DNA from: Ylistrum balloti
Taxonomy: Eukaryota
Length of the DNA stretch: 64,000 nt
Reading direction: 5' to 3'
NCBI RefSeq assembly: GCF_031769215.1
Contig: NW_026781869.1
Span: forward strand, 496,001 to 560,000
Shown here piece after piece: positions 1 to 64,000 of this stretch. Made by a program: the position numbers and the translations under genes. Within the stretch, counting starts at the first letter, position 1, and each line of letters begins with the position of its first letter. Under the pieces are notes generated by a model. The model was not told the origin of the DNA. It saw only the letters and a program-made list of their open reading frames with translations, and searched no databases.

Positions 1-571
1 TTTGCCCGTAGAATACTTATCGCCAACTGGAACAAAATGACATCCATTCTTAATTTAGTCTGACATTGGCTGGGTGGCCACCTATGAAGACAAGTTCGAT
101 ATATATCCATTCATTTTTGCCATCACACAAAGAGAAATGCGAATGAATTATCTACACTCTTGTCATATGACGAGATAAATATATAACTTAAACTCCAGTC
201 TATTTCCATTGCTTCTATTTTCTCTTGTCTTTAAATATCACTTGATACAGACAATGAGTCACCGACAAGAACAATGGCATCATGGAAAGTGGTAATATGT
301 TCCTCTCCCTTCGCCAATTGTGTTATTTGAAGGAAAGCATACCTAGATCTGCAGTCAGCATCCCTCATATACAAAATGGTTTTCTATCAAGGGTGTTATA
401 TCAGGATAAGGCACCATGACTGGTTTCAGAATATACATTATGGCGTTATCTAAATTCTGAAAACACCCTAGCACTTCCATCACGAAAATAATAAAATAAC
501 ATATATATTATAATGTAATCACTATGGCATGAAACCATCCCTGTGTTGTTGAAAACTTCCTCTGGCTTCAA
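1..571 (-). pseudogene. Decayed cGAS-like receptor (cGLR/Mab-21) exon 2, copy 1; continues beyond the left edge of the window
   Basis: The reverse complement aligns by eye along its whole length with 55248-55940, e.g. EEVFNN..DYI, ...DAIVLVGDS..SSDI*RQ, EW..RT...WP, NGCHFVPVGDKYST vs DGCHVVPVGDKCST. Acceptor tttatttcag|TTG at 572/571. It has in-frame stops and frameshifts, and the GS..DxD motif is destroyed. Confidence 0.85.
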
Positions 572-859
572 CTGAAATAAAGTGATCAAGTTTAAAGTTT
601 AATCCGAAAAGTCTTTAAAGGCATATATAGTTCAAACATAATAAGTAAATAAGTTCGCGGATAACATGTATATTTCCAACCAGTTGCGACCAATTGTACT
701 AAAATATAAGACATTTTGCTATAACAATTTGTCAAATAAAAAAATAATGATAACTGAAGTCTCCACATGACTTCTTCACTTCAGGACATGCAGATAAAAA
801 CGTACCTATCAATTTTAAACACAAGGATACAAAATCACTACCATTCAGGATGTCCTTCA

Positions 860-1785
860 GGGCAGACTGATATATAATGTTTACACACCGCGTCACATAT
901 TACTACCCTCAGGGCAGACTGACACATCATGTTTACACACCGCGTCACATATTACTACCCTCAGGGCAGACTGACACCTAATGTTAACACACAGCGTCGC
1001 ATATTACTACCCTCAGGGCAAACTGACACATCATGTTTACACACCGCGTCGCATATTACTACCCTCATGGCAGACTGACACATCATGTTTACACACCGCG
1101 TCACATATTACTACCCTCAGGGCAGACTGAGACTGACACCTATTTTTTACACATCGTGTCACATATTACTACCCTCAGCACAGACTGACACATCATGTTT
1201 ACACACCGCGTCACATATTATTACCCTCAGCATACACTGACACATCATGTTTACACACCGCGTCACATATTACTACCCTCAGGGCAGACTGACACATCAT
1301 GTTTACACACCGCGTCACATATTATTACCCTCAGCACACACTGACACATCATGTTTACACACCGCGTCACATATTATTACCCTCAGCACAGACTGACACA
1401 TCATGTTTACACACCGCGTCACATATTATTATCCTCAGCACACACTGACACATCATGTTTACACACCGCGTCACATATTATTACCCTCAGCACACACTGA
1501 CACATCATGTTTACACACCGCGTCACATATTATTACCCTCAGCACACACTGACACATCATGTTTACACACCGCGTCACATATTATTACCCTCAGCACAGA
1601 CTGACACATCATGTTTACACACCGCGTCACATATTATTACCCTCAGCACACACCGACACATCATGTTTACACACCGCGTCACATATTATTATCCTCAGCA
1701 CACACTGACACATCATGTTTACACACCGCGTCACATATTATTACCCTCAGCACACACTGACACATCATGTTTACACACTTACACA
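860..1785. repeat. Tandem minisatellite, 52-bp unit (cagggcagactgacacatcatgtttacacaccgcgtcacatattactaccct), about 17 copies
   Basis: Direct tandem repeats read from the sequence. Confidence 0.95.
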
Positions 1786-1859
1786 CATCGTATTACACGT
1801 AAGGGCAGAAAAGAACATAAAGTTCACAAAAAGCGTATATCAACCACTATCGTATAAAG

Positions 1860-2570
1860 AGGCAGCTGACAACTACCTCTCAGAACAAACATAAATAATG
1901 TTTACACACAGCACCATCTGACAACTGCCTCTTAAAACAGACAATTGCCTCTTAAAACAGGCATTGATAATGTTTACACACAATACCATCTGAGAACTGC
2001 CTCTTAAACAGGCATTGATAATGTTTACACACAATACCATCTGACAACTGCATCTTAAAACAGGCATTGATAATGTTTACACATAGCATCAGCTGACAAC
2101 TGCCTCTTAAAACAGGCATTGATAATGTTTACACACAGCACCATCTGACAACTGCCTCTTAAAACAGGCATTGATAATGTTTACACACAGCACCATCTGA
2201 CAACTGCCTCTTAAAACAGCCATTCATAATATTTACACACAATACCATCTGACAACTGCCTCTTAAAACAGGCATTCATAATGTTTACACACAATACCAT
2301 CTGACAACTGCCTCTTAAAACAGGCATTTATAATGTTTATACACAGCACCATCTGACAACTGCCTCGTAGAACAGACATAAATATTTTTTACACACAGCA
2401 CCATCTGACCACTGCCTCTTAGACATATATATGTTAACATACAGAACCATTGGAACACTGCCTCTCAAACTAGACATTAATAATGTTTTCACCAGCACCA
2501 CCTGACCACTGCCTTAAAAACAGACTTAAACATAATGGTCGCACACAGCGTCACCTGACTACTACTTTTT
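1860..2570. repeat. Tandem minisatellite, second 52-bp unit (acagcaccatctgacaactgcctcttaaaacaggcattgataatgtttacac), about 13 copies, degenerate at the ends
   Basis: Direct tandem repeats; shares an atgtttacac core with the neighbouring arrays. Confidence 0.9.
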
Positions 2571-2672
2571 AAAGTCGACATACAAATCATGTTTACTTAC
2601 AGCAGACATATATATATATAATGTTAACATACAGCAAACTTTTACATAATATTTACATACAGCAGACATATA

Positions 2673-61194: not shown

Positions 61195-61196
<2 letters not shown>

Positions 61197-61256
<60 letters not shown>
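61197..61256. repeat. (TC)30 microsatellite
   Basis: Read directly. Confidence 0.97.
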
Positions 61257-61258
<2 letters not shown>

Positions 61259-62712
61259 ATTTACTCTAAGTATCATATAGTTGAGGTATAAACCTGTACA
61301 ATTGGTATCCCTTCTGAATGTGTTGTCAGATTGTGAACAAAAGCATGACATACTTTTTTGCTTAAGTTTACTTACTTCTTGTCTTTATCGTTTTGACTCC
61401 CCGTGACTGTCACCGTCCTGAACATTGCTATTCGTTGTTCAAAAATTATCACACGAATATCCACAATTCCTTGTGAGACTACTCTTTGTCATTATAAATG
61501 TATCAGTTTTCTATCCCTTCCTGCTGGCAATTGTGTACGAAGTAATTCATCTATGAACTAATTTCCTTTAAACCTATTTAAGAGACATCATTTAATTTTG
61601 TTTTAAAGTGGAAGTAATGCAGGTTCAAAATGTATGTCAATATCACGCAAACGCATTAGAAAGCAAGGTAAGTTCATTGACAACACGTGTGCGTATCTGT
61701 ATGATATAAACAAACTACTACATTTGACCATTTCTCCCAATGGATTTTAAATCATCTTTTTAAAATCCATTACCGCTTTATTTGACACCCCATAACCATT
61801 TTACAAATATGCTTTAAAATGTATTCTATCAATTTTTCTTCAATGATTAATGCCGATAATATGATGGCATGTTCATGTGTCAGCGTACCAATTGCGTCTT
61901 GTTTCGTCAAATGTAATTCGCTGTTGCATTTGCCCCATCTCGGTTGATTCTGTAATTGATAACGGGTACCGGAATCGGCCGAGTTAGCCGACTTTTACCG
62001 ATGGTGATTCAGATCCGCTGGCATATGTACATAATTGTACGTACATTAAAAATCGGGTATACTCATGTTACACGTCCTACTGGTTTCGTTCCGCTCTATA
62101 TGCCTTTATGTATTCTGGAAATACCTTGCATAAACATGTGTCAGTTGAGCTAAATGGAGAAATTGTCGCGGAATGTTGGACATATCACTAGGGTAGGTTG
62201 CCACACCACTGGAAATTCTTCTTATATACACGATATTACACAATCGAACGTGTGCACGCATTGTAATTGTAGGATAGCATACGATAGGTGTTTCTCGTCA
62301 CTCTGGTGTGATCAAATGAGCAAAAATGTAAGTATATGAACATTATGAAGACAGATACTAAACAAATGGTCATTTAGATTGAACTTATGTCAAAAAAGAG
62401 GCACCAAATTTAATCAACAAAACCAGCTGAACTGTAAATATATCAGTGTCTCCAGATAAACAAGCAGAAGAGTCATTAAGATTAAAACTCTCGTCTGAGA
62501 AGTTCAGTCGAGACGGACCCTTCCGTCATCAAAACGAGACATCAAAAGGCGGGGCATGTAGGTAGCAGGAGGACTGATAAGGCGACCAGTCCTGTTTCTA
62601 GTGAATATATTAGCGGCTGACTTTTGAAACAATTGTCTCTGACTTTTGATTGTAAGACGTGTGTCACAGCGGAACCTATGAATCCTGTGCATGAATTGAC
62701 GACGTTATAACG

Positions 62713-64000
62713 ATGGCTATTCCACTTGCAAACTTTCACAAAAACAGCAAGTTGACTTTCGAGCACATTAAACATGAAGAACCGTGTCCTTTAACTACCG
62801 AGTTTTTAACCCAGGTAAGTCTACAATCTTAAAGTTAATTCAGCGATCGATTTATGGTGTTACATGTTGAAATTCAACGTCGTTGAAAATGGAAACAAAT
62901 AATAACCTGAAAATTGTATAAGTATATTAGCCTTGGACACCTGAATCACTGAACATTTTTACAGAATGGATTGTTAACTTCAGACGGTACCTAAAACATA
63001 TCTTAACCTACAAAATGCCCCTTTAAACACTCTTCTTGAAATGAAACAAAACTGAAAAATTCACAAAACTCTATAAACCTAGGCAAATACAATAAACGGT
63101 TAGAAATCCCTAATGTCAAAAAAATAATGATAATAAGAAATAAAATCGTACCCAAATAGATTTAAAGTACATTTGAGTTACTGGCTAATTAATTTTTTTT
63201 TTAAAGCACAGGATGAACTAAACAAGAAATTTGTATTTGTATTAAAGTTGTACTAAGGCAGGTAGAAAGTCAATACGTGTCATCTCTTGTATTTGAGCTC
63301 ATTACCAAATGTCTTGAAAATATTGACGTATCGATGTGTGTGTCTAATTTGAGAAAATACACACGACAAGATCACGTGATCACTCGATGAGGATCTCAAA
63401 ATGCTTGTTTGCATCTCCATATAAATATCAGTCATCTTTAGACGGTTGGCGTTGTTGGCAATCACTTTGCCATGTTTTCTAAGGTGGTGTTTTTGCAAAG
63501 ATAATTTTCTACTCTTTCAGTGAACTTTAGTGGTTTTTGCGGTTTCGTTTCTCTTTTTGTTTCTTACCACACAAGATAAGAATGATTCTGAAAACGGAGA
63601 AAAAAACCCAAAAAAAACATGATTTTTTTTACCTGCATGATAAGCAATATTATGATGAATTGTAAACAACCCCTATTAATGATATAGTCTTTTCCATTTT
63701 TTTCCCGAATTCCCTCCCTTTATTCTTCACCATTTGATTAATTCACATTAGGAACTGTTTGTCGCCTTCTTTATAGGCCAGAAAAATAAGGCTGATATGT
63801 ATAGGTTCCAAATTCGTCTCTCCGGGGTCAATTTGGTGAATGATAACATAGCAAAACTAATATACATTTAAGATCTTACTTCACAGAGTGGCTACGAAAA
63901 ACAAACTACCATCATTATTTATTTACTTTGAATTCAATGTTTCCTTACAGTTGTTGCAACATCCACGGTACAAAATCGACAACGACAGCATATCACCTTT
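62713..64000 (+). CDS. 5' part of cGLR copy 3: exon 1 62713-62814, exon 2 from 63951 running off the window
   Basis: Exon 1 is MAIPLANFHKNSKLTFEHIKHEEPCPLTTEFLTQ|gtaagt. Acceptor ttccttacag|63951 gives LLQHPRYKIDNDSISP, matching copy 2 LLQDKRYNVDHKNISL with the same phase-0 intron. Whether this copy is intact cannot be seen in this window. Confidence 0.82.

What the first reader, a model, noticed from the sequence alone, without database searches (positions are those of the whole stretch)
1..64000. Three-copy cGAS-like receptor (cGLR) cluster enclosing a tandem pair of SLC5 transporters
Seen in sequence: three homologous two-exon Mab-21/NTase genes (5787->1 minus and decayed; 53706-57319 plus and frameshifted; 62713-> plus) share the same phase-0 intron and surround two intact SLC5 genes. 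Two of the three copies and all first exons are absent from the ORF track. Established knowledge: cGLRs are innate-immune sensors that synthesise nucleotide second messengers, the family is expanded in bivalves, and mammalian cGAMP import uses other SLC families (SLC19A1, SLC46A2), not SLC5. Inference: this is a birth-and-death immune locus. A functional link with the transporters (co-regulation, or transport of a messenger or immune metabolite) is speculative; the layout could come from an inversion or duplication alone.
Basis: partly seen in the sequence, partly recalled or inferred. Interest (0 to 1): 0.78.

Follow-up and report, generated by a model that had tools for sequence, protein, structure and literature searches.

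The report
Scallop cGLR genes flanking two SLC5 transporters
This stretch of scallop (Ylistrum balloti) genome holds ordinary members of the large bivalve family of cGAS-like immune sensor genes beside two intact sodium-coupled transporter genes; the "frameshifted" copy is intact in four other sequenced samples, and nothing shows that sensors and transporters work together.

Summary
The window is Ylistrum balloti JAUZWB010000230.1, about 496001-560000.

**cGLR-type genes (Mab-21 core plus TPR-like tail), all two-exon:**
- **Copy 3** (62713 onwards) is the annotated 726-aa LOC132565580. It has an invariant G-S/DxD/D active site, and its predicted core matches cGAS and cGLR structures.
- **Copy 2** (53706-57319) lacks 10 nt at 55878-55881 in this reference. 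Contigs from four other samples (two studies) all carry those 10 nt, which gives an open 730-aa frame. Copy 2 vs copy 3 dN/dS is 0.24. The lesion is therefore a reference-only null allele or an assembly error, not a dead gene.
- **Copy 1** (5787 to 1, minus strand) is truly decayed.
- A fourth C-terminal fragment lies about 3 kb beyond the window.

**SLC5 genes.** Both minus-strand genes (SMCT/SMVT/NIS clade) model as open 602- and 606-aa frames with GT-AG introns throughout.

**Adjacency.** SLC5 head-to-head with a cGLR recurs at the Argopecten irradians ortholog. It does not recur at the Pecten maximus ortholog or at five other relatives, whose neighbours include TIR-STING and an RNase L-like gene.

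**N run.** It is intergenic and has the same length as the public record.

**Verdict.** This is an ordinary piece of a known radiation. A functional link to SLC5 is unsupported. The scan found a similar reference-only lesion in another cGLR of this genome.

The parts
1..571 (-). Copy 1 (pseudogene), exon 2 remnant; runs off the left edge at about residue 270 of 726
   Evidence: tblastn to P0001 in three frames, with three in-frame stops and deletions. DEDVM has become DNAIM, so the second catalytic Asp is lost. About 66-68% nt identity to copy 2. Acceptor cag|TTG at 573-572.
572..5698 (-). Copy 1 intron remnant, largely filled by minisatellites (863-2523 and 4007-5630)
   Evidence: Tandem Repeats Finder, periods 52, 28 and 165.
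5699..5787 (-). Copy 1 exon 1 remnant. The ATG at 5787 is out of frame with the conserved peptide at 5767-5699, and a stop precedes the degraded donor
   Evidence: tblastn E 6e-6 in 9 kb to exon 1 of relatives; sequence read.
10639..28118 (-). SLC5 gene A (SMCT/SMVT/NIS clade): 17 coding exons, 602-aa open frame. First coding exon ATGG|gtaagt at 28118-28115, stop at 10641-10639
   Evidence: Paralogous exon map, splice sites, and a spliced model with GT-AG throughout. Pfam SSF on exon 24164-24436 scores 22.9 against a cut-off of 22.8. dN/dS vs gene B is below 0.1.
20825..22118 (-). Decayed Tc1/mariner-type transposase remnant inside an intron of gene A
   Evidence: Pfam HTH_Tnp_Tc3_2, E 4.5e-21, on 21529-21927.
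14995..17790 (.). 39-nt minisatellite (about 64 copies) in the intron between gene A exons 9 and 10
   Evidence: Tandem Repeats Finder; exon coordinates.
31856..49223 (-). SLC5 gene B: 16 located coding exons giving a 606-aa frame with the untraced ATG+1 exon. Ortholog of the Argopecten SSF gene next to P0002
   Evidence: Pfam SSF on 48173-48445 (25.6 bits) and 42046-42144 (24.5 bits). Best PDB sequence hits are SMCT1 7sl9, SMVT and NIS. Exons are 89-96% identical to the A. irradians gene.
42212..42684 (-). 61-nt array derived from the GGLKAVVWTDVLQ exon, lying in the intron upstream of the real exon 42135-42055. Degenerate copies also sit in gene A at about 20400-20575
   Evidence: This is the subject of another first-stage note (s1-268643).
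50243..50246 (-). Tentative first coding exon of gene B (ATGC|gtaagt)
   Evidence: Inference only. It is the one ATG+1-nt|GTAAGT site in 49240-53700 that matches the form seen in gene A and A. irradians.
53706..53816 (+). Copy 2 exon 1 (37 codons), donor GTAAGT, phase 0
55248..57319 (+). Copy 2 exon 2. In this reference the frame breaks at 55878-55881 and stops at 56037. With the 10 nt seen in four other samples it has 693 codons plus a stop, for 730 aa in all
   Evidence: Pfam Mab-21_C, E 1.2e-11.
55878..55881 (+). Site of the reference-only net 10-nt loss after the HGWP motif
   Evidence: read-laying table 4: X1, X3 and X5 have T plus TCAGACTTT put in, X2 has CATGT plus ACTTT. Both give the same sequence.
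58775..59359 (.). N run (585). It is intergenic, between copy 2 and copy 3
   Evidence: The offset to L001 is the same on both sides. The letters were not read.
62713..62814 (+). Copy 3 exon 1 (34 codons) of LOC132565580
63951..64000 (+). Copy 3 exon 2, first 50 nt. The gene continues beyond the window to 726 aa
   Evidence: 100% identity to P0001 over the whole of exon 2 in L001. Pfam Mab-21 and Mab-21_C are above cut-off.

Best explanation
The window is an ordinary segment of the scallop genome, where members of the very large bivalve radiation of cGAS-like receptor (cGLR) genes lie next to an unrelated, old tandem pair of SLC5 transporter genes.

**The cGLR genes.** They encode about 730-aa proteins: a cGAS-type nucleotidyltransferase core with a complete active site, followed by a helical TPR-like tail of about 330 aa. 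By inference from characterised cGLRs, they sense a ligand in the cytosol and make a cyclic nucleotide messenger for STING-type receptors.

**History of the copies.**
- Copies 2 and 3 are sister genes from an old tandem duplication in the Ylistrum lineage (dS about 0.9). Both have been kept by purifying selection.
- The 10-nt lesion of copy 2 is private to this reference. It is either a young null allele or an assembly error.
- Copy 1 and a fragment beyond the window are dead remains.
- This is birth-and-death turnover.

**The SLC5 genes.** They belong to the SMCT/SMVT/NIS clade and are intact. They diverged long ago and most likely carry small anions or vitamins with sodium. Their position beside the cGLRs is inherited gene order, not a functional module.
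For: **Source of the window:** (P0001 lies on GCA_031769215.1 JAUZWB010000230.1; 100% identity).

**cGLR family membership**
- Pfam Mab-21 scores 26.9 and Mab-21_C 45.7, both against a cut-off of 24.1.
- The best PDB sequence hit is cGAS-like receptor 1, 8gjy, E 2.4e-10.
- G93, D105, D107 and D218 are invariant, and S94 nearly so, in 36 scallop homologs.
- The AlphaFold model of residues 1-405 has pLDDT 87. Foldseek matches it to cGAS, Cv-cGLR1 and Sp-cGLR1 at probability 1.00, with TM by target 0.64-0.72.
- The tail is a helical repeat with only weak TPR matches.

**Radiation**
- 190 hits; the 120 listed come almost entirely from four scallop species.
- More than 200 cGLRs occur in some bivalves, and cGLR-TPR fusions are described.

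**Copy 2 is alive in other samples:**. dN/dS is 0.24. Copies 2 and 3 are sisters with support 100/99.

**Dead copies:**. Similar debris surrounds relatives.

**SLC5 genes**
- Gene models.
- Family assignment.
- dN 0.17 with saturated dS.

**Neighbours of relatives differ:**
Against: - No enzymatic or expression data exist here, and no RNA run held the stretch.
- Pfam's Mab-21 NTase hit covers only the last third of that domain. The assignment of the N-terminal catalytic residues rests on motif, conservation and the predicted fold.
- The SLC5-cGLR head-to-head pair is kept in Argopecten irradians with only 1.76 kb between start codons. That layout is compatible with a shared promoter.
- The ATG exon of gene B was not located with certainty. 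The A. irradians ortholog is 658 aa against 606 aa modelled here, so a C-terminal exon may be missing from my models.
Confidence: 0.85

Rival explanations
1. The SLC5 genes and the flanking cGLRs form a functional module. Gene B and copy 2 share a bidirectional promoter and are co-induced. The transporter moves a nucleotide messenger or an immune metabolite.
For: The head-to-head arrangement is kept in Argopecten irradians, where the SSF gene start lies 1.76 kb from the P0002 start. Gene B is the ortholog of that SSF gene.
Against: - The orthologous Pecten maximus gene P0008 has tubulin and astacin genes upstream and no SLC5 exon within 10 kb either side.
- Five other subfamily members have other neighbours.
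- No conserved non-coding sequence lies between the two genes in Ylistrum and Argopecten.
- SMCT/SMVT/NIS-type carriers take small monovalent anions or vitamins (established knowledge). Known cyclic-dinucleotide importers belong to other SLC families.
- Adjacency kept in two related genera is what ordinary conserved gene order gives.
Confidence: 0.05
2. The 10-nt lesion in copy 2 is an assembly or consensus error of the reference. No allele of that kind exists in any animal.
For: - All four other samples lack the lesion.
- The reference also differs from all four by single-base indels at 52530 and 52952 and by a 22-nt indel at 54902.
Against: - The change is complex: 12 letters replaced by 2, in non-repetitive sequence. 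That is not a typical read error.
- The roughly 26 reference-private substitutions in 5.9 kb are mostly transitions, which looks like a divergent natural haplotype.
- Null alleles are common in fast-turnover immune families (general knowledge).
Confidence: 0.35
3. These Mab-21/TPR proteins are not nucleotide-messenger synthases. They act as scaffolds or regulators, like MAB21L1 or the shrimp Mab21 proteins reported to signal outside the nucleic-acid sensing scheme.
For: - No biochemical data exist for this subfamily.
- Sequence identity to solved cGLRs is only 15-20%.
- The abstract of PMC12928593, listed, reports non-canonical Mab21 signalling in shrimp.
Against: The full G-S, DxD and D active-site set is invariant or nearly so across 36 homologs that are otherwise only 48% conserved per column. 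That argues for retained catalysis. The fold matches active cGAS and cGLR enzymes over the whole core.
Confidence: 0.12

Closest known systems
Bivalve cGAS-like receptors, e.g. Cv-cGLR1 (PDB 8gjw) and the cGLR-TPR fusion class of Li et al. 2023
   Same: - Mab-21 NTase core plus helix bundle.
- Complete G-S/DxD/D site.
- Predicted fold match at probability 1.00.
- Appended TPR-like module.
- Membership of a lineage-specific radiation of hundreds of genes.
   Different: - Only 15-20% identity to solved cGLRs.
- The 330-aa tail has no close solved relative (best Foldseek E about 0.01).
- Ligand and product are unknown.
Human cGAS (e.g. PDB 6ct9)
   Same: The overall caged NTase fold (TM by target up to 0.72) and the catalytic residue pattern.
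   Different: - A helical tail follows the core, and the N-terminus is short where cGAS has a disordered DNA-binding N-terminus.
- The zinc thumb and DNA-binding surfaces were not examined.
SLC5A8/SLC5A12 (SMCT), SLC5A6 (SMVT), SLC5A5 (NIS)
   Same: Best sequence matches of the gene A and gene B exons are SMCT1 7sl9 (E 3.8e-15), SMVT and NIS. Pfam SSF is above cut-off. Length is about 600-660 aa.
   Different: Substrate is unknown. There are two old paralogs (73% identical). Introns carry arrays derived from an exon.

Membership tests
cGLR (cGAS-like receptor, Mab-21/CD-NTase superfamily; criteria as in Li et al. 2023) | Complete catalytic site: G-S motif, [DE]x[DE] and a third acidic residue | tested here: met
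   In P0001, G93, D105, D107 and D218 are invariant, and S94 is present in at least 90%, of 36 homologs. Copy 2 has CGS...SDSD...SLD. Copy 1 has lost the second Asp.
cGLR (cGAS-like receptor, Mab-21/CD-NTase superfamily; criteria as in Li et al. 2023) | Sequence homology over the NTase core and the C-terminal helix bundle | tested here: met
   Pfam Mab-21 scores 26.9 bits and Mab-21_C 45.7 bits, cut-off 24.1. PDB phmmer hits are cGLR1 8gjy at E 2.4e-10 and cGAS at E 1.8e-7. The Pfam NTase match covers only profile positions 119-196.
cGLR (cGAS-like receptor, Mab-21/CD-NTase superfamily; criteria as in Li et al. 2023) | Predicted structural homology to known cGLR/cGAS | tested here: met
   Model pLDDT 87.1, pTM 0.87. 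Foldseek matches cGAS, Cv-cGLR1 and Sp-cGLR1 at E about 1e-12, probability 1.00, over about 390 columns.
cGLR (cGAS-like receptor, Mab-21/CD-NTase superfamily; criteria as in Li et al. 2023) | Ligand-activated synthesis of a nucleotide second messenger | not testable with these tools
   Needs recombinant protein and a nucleotide product assay.
SLC5 / sodium:solute symporter family (PF00474) | Significant match to the SSF profile and to solved SLC5 members | tested here: met
   Single exons reach 25.6, 24.5 and 22.9 bits against a cut-off of 22.8. PDB hits: SMCT1 E 3.8e-15, SMVT 1.4e-14, NIS 1.5e-12. A second exon matches SMVT and NIS.
SLC5 / sodium:solute symporter family (PF00474) | Full-length open reading frame with canonical splice sites (intact gene) | tested here: met
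   Gene A is 602 aa and gene B 606 aa, with every intron GT-AG and no internal stop. dN/dS is below 0.1. Caveats: gene B's 4-nt first coding exon is only tentative, and the A. irradians ortholog is 658 aa.
Birth-and-death multigene locus | Tandem paralogs together with decayed copies of the same family | tested here: met
   Copies 2 and 3 are sisters. Copy 1 is decayed. A further fragment lies at L001 16425-16930. Comparable debris is seen in Mizuhopecten loci.
Functionally linked cGLR-SLC5 gene cluster | Adjacency conserved across species beyond ordinary synteny | tested here: inconclusive
   Present in Ylistrum and in Argopecten irradians. Absent within 10 kb at the Pecten maximus ortholog and five other relatives. 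Flanks were limited to 10 kb.
Functionally linked cGLR-SLC5 gene cluster | Co-expression of the transporter and the sensor | not testable with these tools
   No RNA run holds the stretch.

The most novel reading that the evidence does not exclude
The SMCT-like gene B and the cGLR copy 2 form a head-to-head pair that has been kept since before Ylistrum and Argopecten split. The pair is transcribed from one bidirectional promoter, so that a sodium-coupled carrier is co-induced with a nucleotide-signalling sensor and moves its messenger or a linked metabolite.
Probability: 0.05. Interest if true: 0.6.

Novelty: new member of a known kind. Interest (0 to 1): 0.2.

Why it matters
The main value is as a correction. 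A gene that looks dead in the reference is intact in every other sample examined. Pseudogene counts for fast-evolving immune families taken from a single assembly can therefore mislead.

The locus adds one more documented case of birth-and-death turnover in the bivalve cGLR radiation. It also gives exon-level models of two SMCT/SMVT/NIS-type transporters.

The more suggestive neighbours of this cGLR subfamily lie outside this window. They are a TIR-STING gene in Mizuhopecten and an RNase L-like gene elsewhere in Ylistrum. Both would be better starting points than SLC5 for asking which effectors these sensors talk to.

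Tried and rejected
- **Exhaustive representative search.** I queried with one SLC5 exon ORF (42041-42442) and got 0 hits. The ORF is mostly exon-derived minisatellite. This spent the only job of that kind.
- **Full-length SLC5 reference proteins.** I could not fetch any. 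Exons are too short for the length window of the search for homologous proteins, and a spliced protein has no reference, so I did not type it. The gene models rest on paralog comparison and splice logic.
- **Conserved upstream sequence between genes A and B and between Ylistrum and Argopecten intergenic DNA.** Nothing was found, so gene B's ATG exon is only a pattern-based guess.
- **Pfam on stray ORFs** (10054-10614, 8350-8655, 45103-45558, 50868-51227 and others). Nothing was found except the Tc1-type transposase remnant.
- **STING/TIR in the window.** ORFs of the Mizuhopecten STING-TIR gene have no match here.
- **C-terminal domain against the PDB.** Only weak TPR-like matches, E about 0.01.
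- **RNA evidence.** None was available.
- **Rejected: copy 2 as a fixed pseudogene**.
- **Rejected: a simple inverted duplication of a cGLR-SLC5 unit.** Both SLC5 genes and copy 1 are on the same strand.

Full report
**Origin and the N run**

The best homolog of the large plus-strand ORF is P0001, Ylistrum balloti LOC132565580. P0001 matches window 62713-62814 and 63951-64000 exactly. Its gene lies at 558713 of JAUZWB010000230.1 in GCA_031769215.1, so the window is about 496001-560000 of that record.

The N run at 58775-59359 lies between the stop of copy 2 (57319) and the start of copy 3 (62713). No gene model crosses it. The ORFs listed across it are artefacts of translating N.

Features on both sides keep one offset, 52712, to the public slice L001, which contains no N. 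The run therefore stands for 585 letters of a continuous record and is not a gap of unknown size. I did not read or use those letters. A protein scan of L001 passed over them and reported nothing there.

**The Mab-21 genes**

*Copy 3.* Exon 1 is 62713-62814 (34 codons, donor GTAAGT). The intron is phase 0 and 1136 nt long. Exon 2 starts at 63951 and runs off the window. In L001 it is 100% identical to P0001 to the end, 726 aa.

*Copy 2.* Exon 1 is 53706-53816 (37 codons). It has the same phase-0 intron, 1431 nt long. Exon 2 is 55248-57319.
- In the window the frame changes right after the conserved HGWP. Homologs have four more codons there, while the window has two letters, a net loss of 10 nt.
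- The reference frame stops at 56037.
- No gene is called there in the public annotation held by the tool.

*Copy 1, minus strand.*
- Its ATG at 5787 is out of frame with the conserved exon-1 peptide (5767-5699).
- A stop precedes a degraded donor.
- The 5.1-kb intron is stuffed with minisatellites.
- The acceptor is retained at 573-572.
- The exon-2 remnant (571-1) has an internal deletion, three in-frame stops, at least two frameshifts and a broken DxD motif.

*A fourth piece* is a C-terminal fragment. It lies about 3 kb downstream of copy 3, outside the window (L001 16425-16930).

**The frameshift is reference-only**

Five public runs hold copy 2. I laid the Logan contigs of four of them on 51500-57400 (four samples, two studies). 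They are genomic DNA, because they cover the intron and the spacer.

All four carry 10 extra letters at 55878-55881. Two alignment variants were reported, and they spell the same sequence. With these letters, exon 2 is one open frame of 693 codons and reads HGWP-CQTL-IDQIV, as in the orthologs. The total is 730 aa. The other differences listed for those samples add no stop: three are amino-acid changes, and the stop codon changes from TAG to TAA.

Copy 2 against copy 3 gives dN 0.215, dS 0.90 and a ratio of 0.24. The branch of copy 2 is no longer than that of copy 3. Copy 2 has therefore been a constrained gene for nearly all of its history.

The lesion is either a young null allele of the reference animal or an error of the assembly.
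- I lean to a real allele, at about 60:40.
- The change is complex and sits in non-repetitive sequence.
- The reference also differs from all four samples by about 26 mostly transitional substitutions in 5.9 kb, as a divergent haplotype would.
I did not check that note.

**What the proteins are**

- P0001 passes Pfam's cut-offs for Mab-21 and Mab-21_C.
- Its best solved relative by sequence is a cGAS-like receptor 1, 8gjy, at E 2.4e-10, followed by many cGAS entries.
- In an alignment of 36 scallop homologs with 48% mean column identity, G93, D105, D107 and D218 are invariant, and S94 is present in at least 90%. This is the G-S, DxD, D set of cGAS-type enzymes.
- The AlphaFold model of residues 1-405 has pLDDT 87. 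It matches cGAS, Cv-cGLR1 and Sp-cGLR1 over about 390 columns with probability 1.00.
- Residues 396-726 fold as a helical repeat, pLDDT 84, with only weak TPR-type matches.

cGLR-TPR fusions, and radiations of more than 200 cGLRs in single bivalve genomes, are described by Li et al. 2023 (preprint 10.1101/2023.02.22.529553). Here a single search returned 190 significant relatives. The 120 listed come almost entirely from four scallop species. The mechanism, ligand-triggered synthesis of a cyclic nucleotide read by STING-type receptors, is inferred from the family and was not shown here.

**History of the copies**

In a maximum-likelihood tree, copies 2 and 3 are sisters (100/99). Together they are sister to A. 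irradians P0002 plus P. maximus P0008 (98/98). The tandem duplication is thus specific to the Ylistrum lineage, and it is old (dS 0.9).

Copy 1 is about 66-68% identical in DNA to copy 2. It belongs to the same subfamily by its exon-1 peptide.

Decayed fragments also surround the Mizuhopecten relatives P0003 and P0005. Birth-and-death is a fair description of the locus.

**The SLC5 genes**

Comparing minus-strand ORFs of the two halves of the window gave 16 paralogous exons each. Splice-site search gave the same phases and boundaries in both genes.

The A. irradians ortholog starts with a 4-nt coding exon, ATGG|gtatgt. The same form occurs once upstream of gene A, at 28118. For gene B only a candidate ATGC|gtaagt at 50246 was found.

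The spliced models are open: gene A is 602 aa (28118-10639) and gene B 606 aa (49223-31856 plus the first exon). Every intron is GT-AG, and the two proteins are 73% identical. dN is 0.17 with saturated dS, so both are old and constrained.

Single exons pass the Pfam SSF cut-off and match SMCT1, SMVT and NIS best. The A. irradians product is 658 aa, so my models may lack a C-terminal exon. 'Intact' is supported, with that caveat.

**Is there a link between the two gene families?**

In A. irradians an SSF gene lies head-to-head with P0002, with 1.76 kb between start codons. Its exons are 89-96% identical to gene B and 70-81% identical to gene A. The gene B-copy 2 pair therefore predates the split of the two genera.

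Against a functional reading:
- The orthologous P. maximus P0008 has astacin and tubulin genes upstream and no SLC5 exon within 10 kb either side.
- None of P0003, P0005, P0007, P0006, P0120 or P0004 has an SSF neighbour.
- No non-coding sequence is conserved in the spacer.
- The layout is not an inverted duplication of a cGLR-SLC5 unit, since copy 1, gene A and gene B all lie on the minus strand.

Co-expression could not be tested. I put a functional link at about 5%.

**Verdict**

The interpretation as a cGLR birth-and-death locus holds. The SLC5 link remains unsupported. The locus is a new member of a known kind, of low interest.

Noticed in passing
L004:1-7190 (Mizuhopecten yessoensis NEDP02001714.1, upstream of P0005): A 725-aa gene with STING_LBD, TIR_2 and STING_LBD domains lies directly upstream, on the same strand, of a cGLR of this subfamily. 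That is a sensor next to a likely receptor. No STING or TIR match exists in the window.
   Followed up: partly
L007:17691-22411 (Ylistrum balloti JAUZWB010000128.1, downstream of P0006): A 1757-aa gene with ankyrin repeats, a kinase domain and Ribonuc_2-5A (an RNase L-like build) lies 5 kb from another cGLR of this subfamily.
   Followed up: no
window 42212-42684 and about 20400-20575: A 61-nt array derived from the GGLKAVVWTDVLQ exon sits in the gene B intron. Two or three degenerate copies of the same exon lie upstream of the real exon in gene A, so the first duplications may predate the A/B split. The gene B array is already noted by the first stage as s1-268643.
   Followed up: partly
L003:1594-3237 (Argopecten irradians SSF gene): The YFELRY exon of the SLC5 ortholog occurs three times about 800 nt apart (3237-3157, 2427-2368, 1653-1594). 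This may be a set of alternative exons or another exon-derived repeat.
   Followed up: no
window 20825-22118: A decayed Tc1/mariner-type transposase (HTH_Tnp_Tc3_2, E 4.5e-21) lies in an intron of gene A.
   Followed up: partly
window 14995-17790; 863-2523; 4007-5630; 38962-40406: Large minisatellite arrays (periods 39, 52, 28/165 and 25/42) fill introns of gene A, copy 1 and gene B. The 39-nt array gives long spurious ORFs.
   Followed up: no
window 54400-54850: A high-copy repeat lies in the copy 2 intron. Contig depth there is up to about 10 times its surroundings, with many loose ends and small joints in all four samples. A 22-nt indel against the reference sits at 54902.
   Followed up: no
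window 10051-10614 (+): A 188-codon open frame lies just beyond the 3' end of gene A, with no Pfam match. It may be a remnant of a mobile element.
   Followed up: partly
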